Shown piece after piece: positions 3,188 to 21,998 of a stretch of DNA of 64,000 nucleotides; the first letter of the stretch is position 1, and every line of letters starts with the position of its first letter. A program made the translations under genes and the position numbers. Where the stretch lies: positions 62,001 to 126,000 of IMG/VR virus record IMGVR_UViG_3300042289_000986; one strand, given 5' to 3'. The notes beneath the pieces are model-generated. The model was given only the letters and a program-made list of their open reading frames with translations. It did not search any database and was not told the DNA's origin.

Positions 3188-3196
3188 TTTTGAAAG

Positions 3197-3653
3197 TGGA
3201 GGTGAGGAGAGTTGAACTCCTGTCCAAATAATCTAGGCTAAAAGGTCTACATGTTTGAGTGTCTTTAGCATTTCAGCCACCATACGGTAACGGAGACTTT
3301 AGGCTGCATAGTGACACTAACTGAGTTTATAGTCTGCCTGTAGACATTATCGCAATCTACATACGGTTGATATTTTGTTGTTACGTTAGAACTACCAACA
3401 ATCTAACAACCTCTGCTATCAATGATTCTTTAGAGGATCCAGAATCAAGGTTCTTAGGCGGCTAAGAGCATCTCTTCATCCGCATATGAGGCGAGAACCT
3501 CATCAGCGTTGTTGAAAATACTCTCGGCTTCTGCCAAGAGATCAGAAGTGAAATCTTCTGCATTTAGTTTTTTAATCGATTTTTTACGAGGCCATCGATT
3601 AACCTCGACATGCACTTTTAGTTTCAACTATCTGTCGAAACCAGTACACCCCC
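3197..3653 (-). ncRNA. ssrA: tmRNA (about 457 nt)
   Basis: 5' GGGGGTGTACTGGTTTCGAC; 3' GACAGGAGTTCAACTCTCCTCACCTCCA; acceptor stem with G3.U70; internal tag frame 3561-3454 ending LLAA-stop. Confidence 0.95.
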
Positions 3654-3654
3654 A

Positions 3655-3669
3655 AATTTTCAAAGAACA
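3655..3669 (-). promoter_or_regulatory. boxA-like antitermination element upstream of tmRNA
   Basis: Minus strand TGTTCTTTGAAAATT immediately before the tmRNA 5' end. Confidence 0.6.
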
Positions 3670-3676
3670 GATCTAT

Positions 3677-8509: not shown

Positions 8510-9064
8510 GTGAAAACATTAATCATTCACCCAAAAGATACAAGTACTGTTTTTTTAGAACCAATCTACGAAAAGATTGATAACAAAACAGTTATCCAAA
8601 AAGATTGTTCCTTTGAACAACTTATTAATCTCATTGAAACACACGATAGAATTATGATGATGGGTCATGGTTCTCCTGATGGATTATTTTCTATTGGTAA
8701 TTTTGATGAGGGGTATGTTATTGATAAAAATATTGTGGATTTTTTAAAAAAGAAAAAAGAATGTTTTTATCTTTGGTGCAACGCTGATAAATTTGTTGAA
8801 AAATATCAATTGAATGGATTTTATTCAGGAATGTTTATTTCCGAAGTTAATGAGGCAAATTTTTGTAATGTGAATACCGATCAAAAATTGGTTAATGAAT
8901 CAAATTATTCTTTTTCTAAAATTGTTTCTAAATGGGCAAATTATGATATGAAAAACTTGTATGATAATGTAAAGATGGAATATAGCAAACTTGCAGAGTT
9001 TAATAATGTAGCTCTTTATAATTTAAAAAGACTTTATTATCAAACTAGCATAAATATTATTTGA
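8510..9064 (+). CDS. Hypothetical protein (caspase/CHAT-like GHG motif)
   Basis: IMMMGHGSPDG and LWC; TTGACA promoter upstream. Confidence 0.45.
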   Translation: MKTLIIHPKDTSTVFLEPIYEKIDNKTVIQKDCSFEQLINLIETHDRIMMMGHGSPDGLFSIGNFDEGYVIDKNIVDFLKKKKECFYLWCNADKFVEKYQLNGFYSGMFISEVNEANFCNVNTDQKLVNESNYSFSKIVSKWANYDMKNLYDNVKMEYSKLAEFNNVALYNLKRLYYQTSINII

Positions 9065-9097
9065 CAAAAGGAAAGATCTTTGATATGTTAGTAATAC

Positions 9098-9400
9098 GAT
9101 TTGGTGGCAGTTATAACCAAATCAGGATAAAAATTTTTGCTTGTTGGTGAGTTGGGGTTTTTATCTGAGCTAGGGGAGCCAAGCTGCGGTAAGCTATGAT
9201 CCTATGCATTTATACAATACAAGCTATGGACGAAGTTGTGTTCTGCGGATTGCGGAGCCTTCGTTGAGTAGTGGGACAAATTCTAGAATAAAACCCACTA
9301 AACACCAATTCGGGTTAATCTTGTAAGAGGAGCCGACTTTCCGTGGTTGTATAAACATGGCTGAGATTAGTCCTGAATCGTCGCGGGTAAACGATTCACA
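9098..9400 (+). ncRNA. Unassigned structured ncRNA (about 300 nt)
   Basis: Own promoter TTGACA(9061)-N17-TATGTT; GC-rich; no ORF; multiple nested helices. Confidence 0.7.
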
Positions 9401-9466
9401 TTTTCAGTAAATATTATTGTTATTTTTCTCGCGGAAACTTAGAGGTTTTTGCGAAAGGAGATAACA

Positions 9467-15828: not shown

Positions 15829-16203
15829 ATGGATTTATTATTTGTTTACGGTACTTTAATAGAAAATAAAAAAACAAAAATACATAAACTTTTAAACAAA
15901 AATAGTTTGTATATATCTAAAGCTGTTTTTCAAGGTAAACTTTATGATACAGGAAAATATCCAGCAGCAATAAAATCTAATAAAAAAAATGACATGGTTA
16001 TCGGAAATATAATAAAAATATTAGATTTAGAAATATTAAAAAAAATAGACGAATATGAAGGATTAGAGTATAAAAGAAATATAACGACATTAGTAGCTAA
16101 TAAAAAAAATATAAAAGCTTGGATTTATCTTTATTGTAAATCGATTGAGAAACATAAAAGAATAATATCGGGTAATTGGTTAAAATATAAAAAAATAGAT
16201 TGA
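15829..16203 (+). CDS. Gamma-glutamylcyclotransferase (AIG2-like) family protein
   Basis: LFVYGTL, GKLY..G.YP, DEYEG..YKR, AWIY. Confidence 0.85.
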   Translation: MDLLFVYGTLIENKKTKIHKLLNKNSLYISKAVFQGKLYDTGKYPAAIKSNKKNDMVIGNIIKILDLEILKKIDEYEGLEYKRNITTLVANKKNIKAWIYLYCKSIEKHKRIISGNWLKYKKID

Positions 16204-16246
16204 CTGATTAAATATATCTGGTAAATTAGATATAGTTCTTTGAAAA
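16200..16246 (+). promoter_or_regulatory. Sigma70-like promoter followed by boxA-like element
   Basis: TTGACT-N16-TAAATT then GTTCTTTGAAAA (16235-16246). Confidence 0.6.
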
Positions 16247-16257
16247 ATTTAAAAAAG

Positions 16258-16597
16258 TTTAATGTTGGCTAGTCGAACCAGCATTAAAAATCCTGATGCG
16301 AAACCCATCAGGTAACAAGGTATGCAACTCTACCTCTCTATACAACGGATACGTGTCCGTGTTCTGATCAGACATATAGAGTCCCATAGTGGATAACTTA
16401 AAAGTGAAAAAAAAGAGTGTAGGTTCTGGGTAAACCGAAGCTAGATTGGCTAAAACCCTTGTCCCGAAAGGGGTAAAGGTTCTGTGTTCTGATTCTAAGC
16501 ATTATGGCCCAATCGAACAACGATTGGCTTAGATAATGCCAGCAGATTAAGGCGCAACTTAATCGTCAGTCTGGTCCTGTTTGCGACAAAAACACCA
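16258..16597 (+). ncRNA. Unassigned structured ncRNA, 5' domain/RNA A (about 340 nt)
   Basis: GC-rich, no ORF, more than 8 helices with multibranch closure, ends ACCA + U-rich spacer. Confidence 0.7.
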
Positions 16598-16607
16598 ATT
16601 TTTATAA

Positions 16608-16789
16608 TCCGAGAATCCTAACGAGATTCTAGTCAGTACCCACTGATGAATAGAAGCTGTTCGTTACAGTAATAAGGGGGATGGTTGCCGTGACTCGCAT
16701 ACGGTGTGCGTAAGTTGACTCGTCTGAAAAGATAGGGAGTCCGTGCTTGATTCCGAAAGGAAAATGATGGTATGTAAAGACAGCCGAAA
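16608..16789 (+). ncRNA. Unassigned structured ncRNA, 3' domain/RNA B (about 180 nt)
   Basis: Hairpins AGAATC/GATTCT, TCAGT/ACTGA, GCTGT/ACAGT, GACTC/GAGTC; two GAAA tetraloops. Confidence 0.65.
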
Positions 16790-16814
16790 TTTTTTAATTC
16801 TTTTATAATTTAAT

Positions 16815-16888
16815 TCCTTGGTGGGCTAACGGTAAGCCAACAAACTGTTAATTTGTTCATCATGCTGGTTCGAATCCAGCCCAAGGAG
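16815..16888 (+). tRNA. tRNA-Asn(GTT)
   Basis: TCCTTGG/CCAAGGA; ACAAA-CT-GTT-AA-TTTGT. Confidence 0.92.
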
Positions 16889-16970
16889 CTTTTATTAAAT
16901 GTATAAAAATGGTGTTATACTAAGCCAAACCATTATATAAAATGTTACATATAATATGTAAGTATTATAT

Positions 16971-17525
16971 ATGAGTATAAATGCAGATCGTGTTAAAGCT
17001 TGGAGAAAAGATACTAAAAATTTAATTGTTGAAGGGTTTGGAGGAAAATGTTGTATATGTGGTTATGATAAATGTGAAGAAGCTTTTGATATACACCATA
17101 TAGATCCTACTCAAAAGACATTATCTTTTGGAGGAATAAGAGCTAATCCTAAACAATGGAAAATTTTATTAAAAGAGTTAGAAAATTGCGTTTTATTGTG
17201 TGCTAACTGTCACAGAGAATATCATGCAGGTAAAACTAACATCCCAAAAAATATTCCAAAATTTGTAGATTTAAAAGAAAAAAGAAAAATAAAAACATAT
17301 TGTCCAATTTGTAATAAGCAAAAAGCAAATTATCTTATAACTTGTTCAAAAACTTGTGCTGCAAAAAGAAAATCTCAAATCGAATGGGATAATTTTGATT
17401 TATATGATTTACACGTAATTCAAAAATTAAGTAATCTTAAAATAGGAAAAATAGTTGGTGCTTCTGATGTTGCAGTTATAAAAAGATTAAAAAAATTAAA
17501 AATTTATCAACTTCAAAATAATTAG
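16971..17525 (+). CDS. HNH endonuclease with Zn fingers and C-terminal HTH
   Basis: CCICG..FDIHHIDP..CVLLCANCHREYH; CPIC..CSKTC. Confidence 0.85.
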   Translation: MSINADRVKAWRKDTKNLIVEGFGGKCCICGYDKCEEAFDIHHIDPTQKTLSFGGIRANPKQWKILLKELENCVLLCANCHREYHAGKTNIPKNIPKFVDLKEKRKIKTYCPICNKQKANYLITCSKTCAAKRKSQIEWDNFDLYDLHVIQKLSNLKIGKIVGASDVAVIKRLKKLKIYQLQNN

Positions 17526-18689: not shown

Positions 18690-19703
18690 ATGATTAAACA
18701 CGTTGATGTTATTGTCGGTCTTGCTTGGGGGGATGAAGGCAAGGGTAAAATTTCAAGTGCAATGGCCAAAGACTATGATATGGTCTGTCGTTGGAATGGT
18801 GGACCAAATGCTGGTCATACTGTTTATTTGGATGGGAAAAAATACAAAACCCATCTGATTCCTTCTGGTGTTTTTCATGGAAAGAAATCTGTTATCGGTC
18901 CAAACTGTGTTCTGAATATTGAGAAGTTTTTCAAAGAAATTGAATATCTAAAAGAAAATGGATTCGATACATCTTTGGTAAAAGTTCATCCAAATACTCA
19001 TGTGATTACGGATGCACACATTGAATATGATCTGAAACATTTGAAACCAAAACTTGGAACTACAGGTCAAGGTATTGCTCCTTGTTATGCAGACAAAGCA
19101 AATCGTGTTGGTATTCAGGTTAGTAAAGCAAACTTCAATCCCTTAAAAGATTTTATTTGGGATGGAAAATTAGAAGGAAAAATTCTTTGTGAAGGTGCTC
19201 AAAGTATTTGGTTGGATATCAACTACGGTGATTATCCTTATGTGACAAGCTCTGAAACATTTCCTCACAATGCTTGTTCGCTTGGATTTTCACCCAAGAA
19301 AATTCGTGATATTATTGGTGTCGCTAAAATCTATGATACCAAAAGTGGAGTTGATCCGTTGTTTCCAGAATGTCTTTGGAGTGATGTAAAACTAAACAAG
19401 TTAATTGAACTTGGTCAAGAATTTGGTTCTACTACAGGAAGAAAAAGACTTGTGAATTGGTTGAATTTTGGAAGATTAAACAATGCTATTAATCTTTCAG
19501 GTTCAACCAAAGTAATCATCAATAAGTGTGATGTTTTTGAAAAAGTTGGAATCTTCCGAATTAATAATTTTTACGAAACATCTTTGGAAACAAATTCTTT
19601 TGATCAGTTAAAAGACATCATTAAAAAGTCTTTGGTAAATCAAAACATCAATGGATTAAAACCAAATAATATTATTTTTTCTGGTGATCAGACGAATATT
19701 TAA
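18690..19703 (+). CDS. purA: Adenylosuccinate synthetase (short form)
   Basis: GLAWGDEGKGK, GGPNAGHT, GTTGQGI, EGAQ, YPYVTSS, EFGSTTGRKR. Confidence 0.95.
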   Translation: MIKHVDVIVGLAWGDEGKGKISSAMAKDYDMVCRWNGGPNAGHTVYLDGKKYKTHLIPSGVFHGKKSVIGPNCVLNIEKFFKEIEYLKENGFDTSLVKVHPNTHVITDAHIEYDLKHLKPKLGTTGQGIAPCYADKANRVGIQVSKANFNPLKDFIWDGKLEGKILCEGAQSIWLDINYGDYPYVTSSETFPHNACSLGFSPKKIRDIIGVAKIYDTKSGVDPLFPECLWSDVKLNKLIELGQEFGSTTGRKRLVNWLNFGRLNNAINLSGSTKVIINKCDVFEKVGIFRINNFYETSLETNSFDQLKDIIKKSLVNQNINGLKPNNIIFSGDQTNI

Positions 19704-21458: not shown

Positions 21459-21475
21459 TTTTCTTTGAAATTTTA

Positions 21476-21572: not shown

Positions 21573-21592
21573 GCACAGTTAGCTCAGTGGTA
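21573..21592 (+). pseudogene. 5' fragment of a tRNA gene, truncated by the HNH gene
   Basis: GCACAGT-TAGCTCAGTGGTA after the usual T-rich spacer, no continuation. Confidence 0.7.
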
Positions 21593-21998
21593 TGTTTAAA
21601 TTCTTAATCCTATATCTTTTCTTATATGTGGATCTTTTAGAATTTTTTCTGTTTCTGCTACAATAAGTGTCTGTCTGTGAATGACAATTTGGACAAAGCA
21701 ATCTAATATTATTAGGATAGTTATTATCGGAATTACCATCAATATGATCTAAATGTAATGATATGTCTTTATTTTTCCAATTTGATATTTCACAAACCTC
21801 ACATTTATATCCTCTTTTAAATTGTAAAAATTTTTTTAAAGTAGCAGCTTGTGAACATTTATTAGATTCTATTTTAGGAATAGTTATATTGTTAAATGTA
21901 TAGTTTCCTTGACAAGTATTGTTACAATACTTTCCAAAACTTTTACTTTCATCGTATTTTATTTCTTTTTTACAGTTTAAACAAAAAGAAGTTTTCAT
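21579..21998 (-). CDS. HNH homing endonuclease
   Basis: CLNC..CNNTC; CEVC..LHLDHIDGN..N...NIRLLCPNCHSQT. Confidence 0.9.
   Translation of the reverse strand: MKTSFCLNCKKEIKYDESKSFGKYCNNTCQGNYTFNNITIPKIESNKCSQAATLKKFLQFKRGYKCEVCEISNWKNKDISLHLDHIDGNSDNNYPNNIRLLCPNCHSQTDTYCSRNRKNSKRSTYKKRYRIKNLNIPLS

What the first reader, a model, noticed from the sequence alone, without database searches (positions are those of the whole stretch)
16200..16790. About 530 nt of promoter- and boxA-driven, densely structured non-coding RNA upstream of tRNA-Asn
Seen: GC-rich ORF-free island after TTGACT-N16-TAAATT and GTTCTTTGAAAA. Helices include TTTAATGTTGG/CCAGCATTAAA, CCTGATG/CATCAGG, CTCTATA/TATAGAG, ACGGATA/TGTCCGT and long-range GCTAGATTGGC(16440)/GTCAGTCTGGT(16565), which encloses a GAAA-capped arm, GCATTAT/ATAATGC, CCAATCG/CGATTGG and GATTAAG/CTTAATC. 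Many G.U pairs argue for RNA-level selection. An ACCA plus U-rich spacer at 16594-16607 resembles the spacers between the tRNAs, so this may be two processed RNAs. Known: large ncRNAs such as GOLLD and ROOL occur next to phage tRNA genes. I cannot match this to a named family, so it may be a new class.
Basis: partly seen in the sequence, partly recalled or inferred. Interest (0 to 1): 0.85.

Follow-up and report, generated by a model that had tools for sequence, protein, structure and literature searches.

The report
Two new phage RNAs before tRNA-Asn
The GC-rich, gene-free stretch is a real phage operon for stable RNAs: a promoter and an rRNA-type boxA signal drive two separate folded RNAs and a tRNA, and the second RNA belongs to an undescribed family that sits directly in front of tRNA genes in many lake phages; what it does is unknown.

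Summary
Window 16204-16814 has no ORF, is 42% GC against about 25% in the flanks, folds better than shuffles on the + strand only, and matches no Rfam 15 family.

Relatives show two separable units rather than one RNA.
- RNA-A (about 16258-16597) is a multi-hairpin RNA ending in ACACCA plus a U-run. I found it only in six or seven close relatives. Its local helices covary.
- RNA-B (about 16612-16789) is a roughly 180-nt pseudoknotted RNA. I found 23 distinct copies in viral and metagenome contigs of 30-59% GC, and none in 185,579 bacterial and archaeal genomes.

In 18 of 24 loci a tRNA gene (Asn or Cys) starts 5-12 nt after RNA-B's invariant GCCGA tail (27 nt in the window). Two tRNA-less copies end in a terminator-like hairpin instead.

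A boxA-like element lies upstream of RNA-B on the same strand in 20 of 23 loci. In the window it also directly precedes the tmRNA, tRNA-Ile and tRNA-Asn.

Best reading: an rrn-style, boxA-antiterminated stable-RNA operon whose modules are released by tRNA-type processing. The closest analogues are T4 species 1 and 2 RNAs and GOLLD/ROOL; no homology to any of them was detected.

The parts
16200..16227 (+). Sigma-70-type promoter: -35 TTGACT, 16-nt spacer ending in TG-G (extended -10), -10 TAAATT
   Evidence: Found by the promoter scan. The layout TTGACT-N16-TAA[AG]xT, then 6-7 nt, then boxA recurs in L056, L013, L011, L093 and L096. In L014 it stands in front of RNA-B alone. Activity was not measured.
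16235..16246 (+). boxA-like element GTTCTTTGAAAA, at or near the 5' end of the transcript
   Evidence: Close to the rrn boxA consensus of B. subtilis (AUGAUCUUUGAAA) and E. coli (UGCUCUUUAACA) given in PMC13753749. A boxA-like motif lies within 700 nt upstream of RNA-B, on the same strand, in 20 of 23 loci. The same motif sits 3 nt before the phage tmRNA.
16258..16597 (+). RNA-A: lineage-specific multi-hairpin RNA. Helices at 16258-16288, 16292-16312, 16336-16381 (enclosing 16345-16360), the GAAA-capped arm 16456-16479, 16499-16539 (enclosing 16509-16527), 16545-16564, and a terminal minihelix 16578-16594 followed by CCA
   Evidence: Homologues occur only in L093, L096, L056, L013, L011 and, in part, L006. 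RNAalifold predicts 87 pairs, 11 of them with compensatory changes. Arms are inserted, deleted or swapped between homologues. The true 5' end, somewhere in 16229-16258, is not determined.
16598..16611 (+). U-rich spacer after ...ACACCA: the boundary between the two RNAs and a likely processing site
   Evidence: ACACCAAUUUU is invariant in all six RNA-A homologues. It resembles the encoded-CCA-plus-T-run ends of this phage's tRNA genes. L011 has the 125-nt module Y inserted here. Module X of other phages ends in a similar ACCAC-UUUCU tail.
16612..16789 (+). RNA-B: conserved ~180-nt RNA. P1 16612-16617/16625-16630; P2 16632-16636/16643-16647 with a CC-containing loop; P3 16656-16660/16666-16670; G-rich junction 16671-16682; P4' 16683-16685/16693-16695; P5 16696-16701/16705-16710 with invariant loop CGG 16702-16704; P6 16714-16716/16779-16781 enclosing a variable arm; invariant tail GCCGA 16783-16787
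   Evidence: Covariance models R1 and R2 score 23 distinct copies at 62-229 bits. On the model-fitted alignment 89% of cells pair and 29 pairs show double changes. The covariation score is 0.31, against 0.14 for shuffles and 0.03-0.07 for slid partners. P4', P6 and the contact between the P2 loop and the junction come from my own column counts. P2 is confirmed by a stem swap in L098. The pairing of loop CGG with tail CCG is inferred only, because both are invariant.
16795..16811 (+). Second boxA-like leader, TAATTCTTTTATAATTT, 3 nt before tRNA-Asn
   Evidence: A strict boxA-like pattern hits the window 4 times (0.69 expected). Three of those hits lie 1-4 nt before a stable-RNA gene: tmRNA, tRNA-Ile and this tRNA-Asn. 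This insert explains why the gap from RNA-B to the tRNA is 27 nt here and 5-12 nt in relatives.
16815..16889 (+). tRNA-Asn (GUU), last member of the operon. Its RNase P site would set the 3' end of the upstream RNA
   Evidence: ARAGORN and Rfam tRNA at 60.2 bits. A tRNA (Asn or Cys) follows RNA-B in 18 of 24 loci.

Best explanation
Window 16200-16889 is a phage operon for stable RNAs, built like a miniature rRNA/tRNA operon. Its order is: a sigma-70 promoter, a boxA element, RNA-A (~340 nt), a U-rich spacer, RNA-B (~180 nt), a second boxA-like leader, and tRNA-Asn.

Shown here:
- The two RNAs are separate evolutionary modules.
- Both are structured on the + strand, with compensatory base changes.
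- RNA-B belongs to a family seen only in viral and metagenome contigs. Its members nearly always abut the 5' end of a tRNA gene and lie downstream of a boxA-like element.

Inferred, not shown:
1. The boxA RNA loads host NusB/S10 onto RNA polymerase. This would let the long untranslated transcript escape Rho termination, as in rrn operons and boxA-led CRISPR arrays.
2. RNase P cleavage at the tRNA 5' end defines RNA-B's 3' end, a few nucleotides after GCCGA. Copies without a tRNA use a hairpin plus U-run there instead.
3. RNA-A is trimmed back to its encoded ...ACCA, as a tRNA is.
4. The released RNA-B folds into a compact knot, with the P2 loop on the G-rich junction and the 3' tail on the P5 loop. 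It then acts in trans as a stable RNA during infection.
5. Because it travels with tRNAs, a tmRNA and tRNA-like modules, its target is most likely part of the tRNA or translation machinery. This is the weakest step.
For: No ORF, a GC island and a strand-specific fold.

No Rfam family on the window or on relatives.

The two units are separable:
- L014 has terminator, promoter, boxA, then RNA-B alone.
- L011 has an extra module between A and B.
- In other phages RNA-A is replaced by unrelated modules X or Y.

Covariation is seen in RNA-A and RNA-B.

A tRNA starts 5-12 nt after GCCGA in most loci, exactly 7 nt in all Cys-linked copies. The tRNA-less copies L077 and L078 end in a hairpin, GCCG and a U-run.

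boxA evidence:
- 20 of 23 loci, same strand, usually the only or nearly the only copy in the locus.
- L094 reads GTTCTTTAACAATTT. Twelve of the 13 positions that overlap E. coli's UGCUCUUUAACA are identical.
- In the window the motif also leads the tmRNA and two tRNAs.

RNA-A ends like this phage's CCA-encoding tRNA genes and like T4 rnaD.
Against: There is no transcript, end-mapping or binding data, because the phage and its host are uncultured. All processing steps are inferred from gene order.

Five boxA-like motifs occur in a row in L090, each abutting the 5' end of a module. That is more than antitermination alone needs. The motif could instead, or also, be a processing signal, an RNase P leader, or a phage-specific promoter.

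L006 and L096 carry GATCTTTGACAA. This is still within boxA consensus space, but it shows the motif is not invariant.

The proposed tail-to-P5-loop pairing has no covariation. The P2-loop contact fails in 2 of 22 sequences.

Nothing indicates what RNA-B binds.
Confidence: 0.7

Rival explanations
1. A and B are two domains of one large RNA of the GOLLD/ROOL kind, with a variable 5' part and a conserved 3' part. It would work as a single molecule, perhaps as an oligomeric RNA assembly, and would not be cut at the spacer.
For: The context matches published descriptions of GOLLD and ROOL. They are phage-borne, lie next to tRNA islands and occur in lake metagenomes. GOLLD has a conserved 3' region, a less conserved 5' region and sometimes tRNAs in a linker (PMC12286853). 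Here the 3' unit is conserved and the 5' partner varies among A, X, Y and others. In the window there is no boxA or promoter between A and B.
Against: No GOLLD or ROOL match even at E<=10. L014 puts a terminator-like hairpin and a full promoter plus boxA between X and B. L065, L077 and L078 carry B with no detected A or X partner. The partners are not homologous to one another. RNA-A ends in a tRNA-like ACCA plus U-run.
Confidence: 0.12
2. RNA-B is a cis-acting 5' leader that controls the maturation or yield of the tRNA behind it, for example a ligand- or factor-sensing fold that hides or exposes the RNase P site.
For: The spacing to the tRNA is tight and fixed: 7 nt in every Cys-linked copy and 5-12 nt in the Asn-linked ones. 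The invariant tail just before the tRNA may be tied into the fold. High sequence conservation and pseudoknots are typical of aptamers.
Against: Six of 24 loci have no tRNA after RNA-B, and two of those end in a terminator-like hairpin. The tRNA identity differs between clades although the core is the same. In the window itself a boxA-like leader has been inserted between B and the tRNA.
Confidence: 0.12
3. RNA-B is a self-cleaving ribozyme that frees itself or the tRNA.
For: Most copies contain GUC and CUGAUGA, the words of a hammerhead core. The conserved pseudoknotted core is ribozyme-sized.
Against: No ribozyme family in Rfam matches. Stems I and II of a hammerhead cannot be drawn. In L098 both words are replaced by an unrelated stem (GCCU/GGGC), so they form a hairpin rather than a catalytic core.
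Confidence: 0.04
4. The island is not a functional RNA. It could be decayed coding sequence, decayed tRNA genes, or a DNA-level signal.
For: RNA-A occurs only in close relatives, where conservation alone proves little.
Against: Compensatory changes occur in many helices. Stability is strand-specific. Indels fall on hairpin tips and whole arms. RNA-B is kept in phage contigs of 30-59% GC.
Confidence: 0.02

Closest known systems
Bacteriophage T4 species 1 and species 2 RNAs (rnaC, rnaD)
   Same: They are small stable RNAs of unknown function in a phage of the T4 superfamily, to which this phage's terminase is distantly related. They are encoded inside the tRNA gene cluster next to a homing endonuclease gene and abut a tRNA gene. 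rnaD ends in ...ACCA, as RNA-A does.
   Different: In T4 they lie downstream of a tRNA, not upstream. They are shorter (119 and 139 nt). rnaC has a tRNA-like T arm. The RNA-B model gives no hit on them with filters off. I saw no boxA-like motif in the T4 stretch I read.
GOLLD and ROOL RNAs
   Same: They are large structured RNAs of unknown function carried by phages and prophages near tRNA islands. GOLLD was first seen in lake metagenomes and has a conserved 3' region, a variable 5' region and sometimes embedded tRNAs (PMC12286853).
   Different: There is no sequence or structure match to either Rfam model. The units here are smaller and separable, with promoters, terminators or other modules between them. 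Oligomerisation is untested.
rrn-type boxA antitermination (rRNA operon leaders and spacers; boxA upstream of CRISPR arrays and suhB)
   Same: A 12-nt boxA-like RNA word lies just downstream of the promoter of a long untranslated transcript and is repeated in spacers. It is close to the published consensus sequences (PMC13753749).
   Different: Here a phage carries it in front of tRNAs, a tmRNA and new RNAs. In some relatives it recurs before every module, directly abutting the mature 5' ends. This is not the classic arrangement, and Nus factor binding is untested.
MALAT1/mascRNA-type 3'-end formation
   Same: A non-coding RNA whose 3' end would be made by RNase P cutting at the 5' end of an adjoining tRNA or tRNA-like structure.
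   Different: That system is eukaryotic and unrelated in sequence. It is an analogy of mechanism only, drawn from general knowledge, and cleavage here is inferred.

Membership tests
Any Rfam 15 family (including GOLLD, ROOL, HEARO, OLE, raiA, RNase P RNA, 6S, tmRNA, Y RNA and the self-cleaving ribozymes) | Covariance-model score at or above the family's gathering threshold | tested here: not met
   The only match at gathering in 16100-16900 is tRNA-Asn. At E<=10 only chance-level hits of 18.6 bits or less appear. The same holds for homologous arrays in L074 and L090 and for whole related loci.
GOLLD RNA | Conserved 3' domain homologous to the family's model, about 800 nt in total | tested here: not met
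   No GOLLD hit at E<=10. A plus B together span about 530 nt (16258-16789) and are separable.
GOLLD/ROOL | Forms a homo-oligomeric RNA-only cage | not testable with these tools
   Needs SEC-MALS or cryo-EM of the transcript.
T4 species 1/2 RNAs | Sequence or structure homology to rnaC or rnaD | tested here: not met
   The R1 search of the T4 tRNA region with filters off gives no hit over rnaC or rnaD. R2 also finds none.
T4 species 1/2 RNAs | Stable RNA co-transcribed with, and processed out of, a phage tRNA cluster | tested here: inconclusive
   Gene order, tRNA adjacency and the ACCA end fit. No transcript data are available.
boxA (Nus-dependent antitermination element) | Match to the boxA consensus word | tested here: met
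   GUUCUUUGAAAA compares with B. subtilis AUGAUCUUUGAAA and E. coli UGCUCUUUAACA. Relatives carry GUUCUUUAACAAUUU and GUUCUUUUACAAUUU.
boxA (Nus-dependent antitermination element) | Transcribed position just downstream of a promoter, or in spacers, of a long untranslated operon, on the sense strand | tested here: met
   It lies 7 nt after the -10 in the window and its close relatives. It is on the same strand and upstream of RNA-B in 20 of 23 loci. It also precedes the tmRNA and two tRNAs.
boxA (Nus-dependent antitermination element) | Binds NusB/S10 and suppresses Rho termination | not testable with these tools
   Needs binding assays or reporter assays.
Hammerhead ribozyme | Conserved CUGAUGA, GAAA and NUH core joined by three stems | tested here: not met
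   No model hit. No GAAA-flanked stem II can be drawn. GUC and CUGAUGA are replaced by an unrelated paired stem in L098.
Bacterial RNase P RNA | P4 helix with AGUCC and ACAG...GGCU conserved regions, in the family architecture | tested here: not met
   Short look-alike words occur: AGUCCC-AUAG in RNA-A, GGGUGAAG in module Y, ACAGCCGAA in RNA-B. No RNase P model scores at E<=10 on the window, L074 or L090. The AGUCC word inside RNA-B lies in an arm that other members lack.

The most novel reading that the evidence does not exclude
RNA-B is a new class of phage RNA with an activity of its own, working together with the interchangeable upstream modules A, X and Y. Possibilities are a tRNA-docking or tRNA-escorting scaffold, a decoy against host nucleases that attack tRNAs, or a subunit of an RNA-only assembly. 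The boxA-led arrays that also hold odd tRNA-like RNAs would then be a previously unrecognised phage toolkit of RNAs aimed at the host's translation system.
Probability: 0.15. Interest if true: 0.85.

Novelty: new variant of a known kind. Interest (0 to 1): 0.62.

Why it matters
Phage tRNA islands are already known to hide large RNAs whose function is still unexplained decades after T4 species 1 and 2 and fifteen years after GOLLD.

This locus adds at least one well-supported new family, RNA-B. It has a compact, pseudoknotted, highly conserved core, was found only in viral and metagenome contigs, and is physically coupled to a tRNA 5' end. That makes it small enough for direct biochemistry and structure work.

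The locus also shows that phages can borrow the host's rRNA-type boxA signal for whole arrays of non-coding RNAs (tmRNA, tRNAs, tRNA-like RNAs and new modules). Each part of this proposal can be tested: how long untranslated phage transcripts escape Rho, how their ends are made, and what RNA-B binds.

Tried and rejected
1. DNA similarity to 50,697 GenBank phage records matched only the tRNA.
2. Using the upstream GGACT gene as an anchor found only identical copies, one 96%-identical fragment, and distant bacterial genes with no RNA nearby. The purA gene 2 kb downstream worked as an anchor.
3. Homology of RNA-A to module X: a profile HMM gives no hit. The covariance model R3 gives only a 5-bit match to one hairpin and the ACCA/U tail. 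Homology is not shown.
4. RNA-B in more distant purA-linked phage loci and in T4: none in 0.93 Mb.
5. RNA-B in bacterial genomes: two exact-pattern scans gave zero matches and nine chance matches.
6. The pattern GGGGATGGT..ACC..ACCCGC gave three chance matches in coding DNA.
7. Hammerhead, RNase P, 5S and SRP look-alike words: no model support.
8. A conserved partner protein: the neighbours in the window are a GGACT enzyme and an HNH endonuclease. An 87-aa ORF is syntenic only within the ~47% GC clade and has no Pfam or PHROG family.
9. P1 loop as an Asn 'specifier' or anticodon-like loop: UAAC/UAAU is common, but it does not track the downstream tRNA and is absent in six copies.

Full report
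**What the window is.** It comes from an AT-rich (about 31% GC) uncultured jumbo myovirus. The sequence is identical to part of a 211.6-kb IMG/VR contig. The window encodes a tail sheath, a T4-type large terminase, a class II ribonucleotide reductase and purA. It also carries 14 tRNA genes and a tmRNA gene. The terminase is only about 38% identical to its best cultured relatives, which are phiM9-like members of the T4 superfamily.

**Checking the observation.**
- Positions 16204-16814 have no ORF of 45 aa or more. From 16533 to 16970 there is no ORF of 25 aa or more on either strand.
- GC rises to 0.42-0.44 from 0.20-0.27 in the flanks. This is the longest GC island in the window that no gene explains.
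- The + strand folds at z = -3.5 against dinucleotide shuffles. The - strand reaches only z = -1.5, which fits G-U pairs on the + strand.
- Rfam 15 gives nothing but tRNA-Asn, at the gathering threshold and at E<=10.

**Finding relatives.** DNA search of GenBank phages and the upstream GGACT gene gave only identical copies, plus one 96%-identical 1.2-kb fragment, L006. That fragment was already informative. The first hairpin carries four substitutions, and all of them keep the pairs, including one A-U to G-C exchange. The purA gene 2 kb downstream then retrieved 57 viral loci. Among these, L056, L013 and L011/L012 carry the whole region, and L014 carries only its 3' third.

**Two units, not one.**
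- In L014 the 3' ~180 nt (RNA-B) has its own TTGACT-N16-TAAGAT promoter and boxA-like word. A terminator-like hairpin closing a different RNA lies just before that promoter.
- In L011 a 125-nt GC-rich module (Y) is inserted exactly at the ACACCA/U-rich spacer.
- RNA-A (about 16258-16597) occurs only in the closest lineage: window, L093, L096, L056, L013, L011 and part of L006.

**RNA-A structure.** Its local helices covary.

| Helix | Cells paired | Double changes |
|---|---|---|
| H1 (TTTAATGTTGG/CCAGCATTAAA) | 66 of 66 | 5 |
| CCTGATG/CATCAGG | 41 of 42 | 1 |
| CTCTATA/TATAGAG | 41 of 41 | 1 |
| ACGGATA/TGTCCGT | 40 of 42 | 4 |
| GATTAAG/CTTAATC | 42 of 42 | 3 |

- In L096 the ACGGATA/TGTCCGT hairpin is replaced by a different hairpin.
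- The GCATTAT and CCAATCG arms are swapped for an unrelated hairpin in three homologues.
- A further arm is inserted after the second hairpin, and the GAAA-capped tip is deleted in L011. This is the usual pattern of a structured RNA with variable peripheral arms.
An alternative, GATCAGAC/GTCTGGTC, pairs in 44 of 47 cells but shows no covariation.
- RNA-A ends in a small hairpin followed by CCA and a U-run, invariant in all six homologues. Several of this phage's tRNA genes end the same way, as does T4 rnaD.

**RNA-B is a wider family.**
- A model built from five sequences (R1) found nothing in the more distant purA loci.
- An exact-pattern scan of viral contigs with the invariant hairpin found ten new contigs. 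All score 82-121 bits.
- One metagenome scan added eleven more loci.
- A scan with a pattern from a different part of the RNA found a more divergent copy, L098, at 62 bits.
- Together this makes 23 distinct sequences from contigs of 30-59% GC.
- Two scans of one genome from each of 185,579 bacterial and archaeal species gave no true match. A 23-sequence model (R2) found no second copy in 0.93 Mb of held sequence.

**RNA-B structure.** On the model-fitted alignment:
- 89.4% of cells pair, against 76% for shuffles.
- 29 of 50 pairs show changes on both sides.
- The covariation score is 0.31, against 0.14 for shuffles and 0.03-0.07 when partners are slid.

This alignment was fitted to the structure, so it leans towards it. 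An independent MAFFT/RNAalifold run gave the same P1, P3, P5 and P6 with compensatory changes.

My own column counts refine the core:
- A three-pair helix GGU/ACY: 17 G-C, 4 A-U and 1 G-U at one pair, with GGC/GCC in L078 and L065.
- A contact between the P2 loop (CC plus one variable base) and the G-rich junction: C-G 16, U-A 3, A-U 1, U-U 2.

P2 itself was invariant at first only because I had searched with it. In L098 its stem GUCAG/CUGAU becomes GCCU/GGGC and the loop keeps CC. That confirms the hairpin and removes the hammerhead-like words. The pairing of the invariant P5 loop CGG with the invariant tail GCCGA is plausible but cannot be tested by covariation.

**Context of RNA-B.**
- In 18 of 24 loci a tRNA gene starts 5-12 nt after GCCGA. 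It is tRNA-Asn in the AT-rich clade and tRNA-Cys in the ~47% GC clade, where the gap is always exactly 7 nt.
- In the window the gap is 27 nt because a second boxA-like word is inserted there.
- The tRNA-less copies in L077 and L078 end with the P6 hairpin, GCCG and a U-run.
- The simplest reading is that the functional RNA ends just after GCCGA. That end would be made either by RNase P at the adjoining tRNA or by a terminator. This is an inference.

**The upstream partner varies.** It is RNA-A in the window's clade. In L014 and nearly all of the ~47% GC loci it is a very conserved 140-nt module X, 88% identical across 12 loci. Some loci add module Y, and L095 has something else. X and A are not detectably homologous.

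**boxA.**
- GTTCTTTGAAAA starts 7 nt after the -10 hexamer. The published rrn consensus sequences are AUGAUCUUUGAAA for B. subtilis and UGCUCUUUAACA for E. coli (PMC13753749).
- The word GTTCTTTGAAAACTGAAT is used as a standard mycoplasma-detection PCR primer (PMC3019172). From my own knowledge, that primer targets the conserved rRNA spacer of Mollicutes.
- A boxA-like word lies within 700 nt upstream of RNA-B, on the same strand, in 20 of 23 loci. It usually occurs only once or twice per locus and never on the other strand, except at the window's minus-strand tmRNA. The forms include GTTCTTTAACAATTT and GTTCTTTTACAATTT.
- In the window a strict form of the motif occurs four times (0.69 expected). 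Three of these lie 1-4 nt before the 5' end of the tmRNA, tRNA-Ile and tRNA-Asn. A looser form follows a TTGACA promoter at 9058-9085, in front of another conserved ORF-free island.
- In L090 five copies stand in a row, each abutting the start of a module. Two of those modules are tRNA-like RNAs that neither ARAGORN nor Rfam recognises.
- I read the motif as a true boxA that keeps long untranslated transcripts safe from Rho and may be reloaded after each processing cut. Its constant position at mature 5' ends leaves room for a second role as a processing leader, or for a promoter function in those phages.

**Known families.** No Rfam family matches. GOLLD and ROOL share the context (PMC12286853) but not the sequence or structure. 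T4 rnaC and rnaD share the context and the ACCA end but are not hit by the RNA-B model. Words resembling RNase P, 5S, SRP or hammerhead motifs are not backed by any model.

**Verdict.** It consists of two new RNAs in a boxA-led stable-RNA operon. RNA-B is a new family that I found only in viral and metagenome contigs, and it belongs to the known but unexplained class of structured RNAs in phage tRNA islands. Its molecular function remains inferred only.

Noticed in passing
window 9058-9420 (+): A second unit of the same design. TTGACA-N17-TATGTT overlaps a boxA-like GATCTTTGATA (9075), followed by about 330 nt at 42% GC with no ORF longer than 44 aa. The island is conserved in L014, L056 and L013. 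In L014 and L056 it ends 4-10 nt before tRNA-Ser; in L013 no tRNA-Ser was detected. No Rfam match.
   Followed up: partly
window 3657-3670 (-), 21461-21473 (+): boxA-like words directly abut the 5' ends of the phage tmRNA (3 nt before G1) and of tRNA-Ile (in the Tyr-Ile spacer). The motif is therefore a general leader of stable RNAs in this phage.
   Followed up: yes
L090:1389-1645: Two tRNA-like modules, each preceded by a boxA-like word. They have acceptor-like ends, and one has two T-arm-like hairpins. Neither ARAGORN nor the Rfam tRNA model recognises them.
   Followed up: no
L074:5303-5445 (module X); also L014:6063-6205 and 10 other loci: A 140-nt RNA module lies just upstream of RNA-B and is 88% identical across 12 loci. 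It has one covarying GNRA-capped hairpin and ends in a GC-rich hairpin plus ACCAC-UUUCU. It has no Rfam match and is not detectably related to RNA-A.
   Followed up: partly
L011:3576-3700; L064:12144-12249; L090:1775-1871 (module Y): A ~125-nt module closed by GAGACG/CGTCTC and containing GGGUGAAG...GCGGUGCUUCGG. It sits between A and B in L011 but before X in L064 and L090, so modules are shuffled between phages.
   Followed up: partly
window 16971-17525 (+) and 21579-21998 (-): HNH homing-endonuclease genes sit inside the tRNA region, as segB does in the T4 tRNA cluster.
   Followed up: no
L074:4630-4893 and 11 other loci: An 87-aa ORF with no Pfam or PHROG family lies between tRNAs and the RNA array in 12 loci of the ~47% GC clade (79-100% identical). 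It is absent from the window's clade.
   Followed up: partly
window 3196-3653 (-): A phage-encoded one-piece tmRNA with the predicted tag ADEEMLLAA (Rfam 138 bits). Related phage loci L016 and L021 also carry tmRNA genes.
   Followed up: no
window 15829-16203 (+), 18690-19703 (+): Auxiliary metabolic genes flank the RNA operon: a gamma-glutamylcyclotransferase-like (GGACT) gene and adenylosuccinate synthetase (purA).
   Followed up: no
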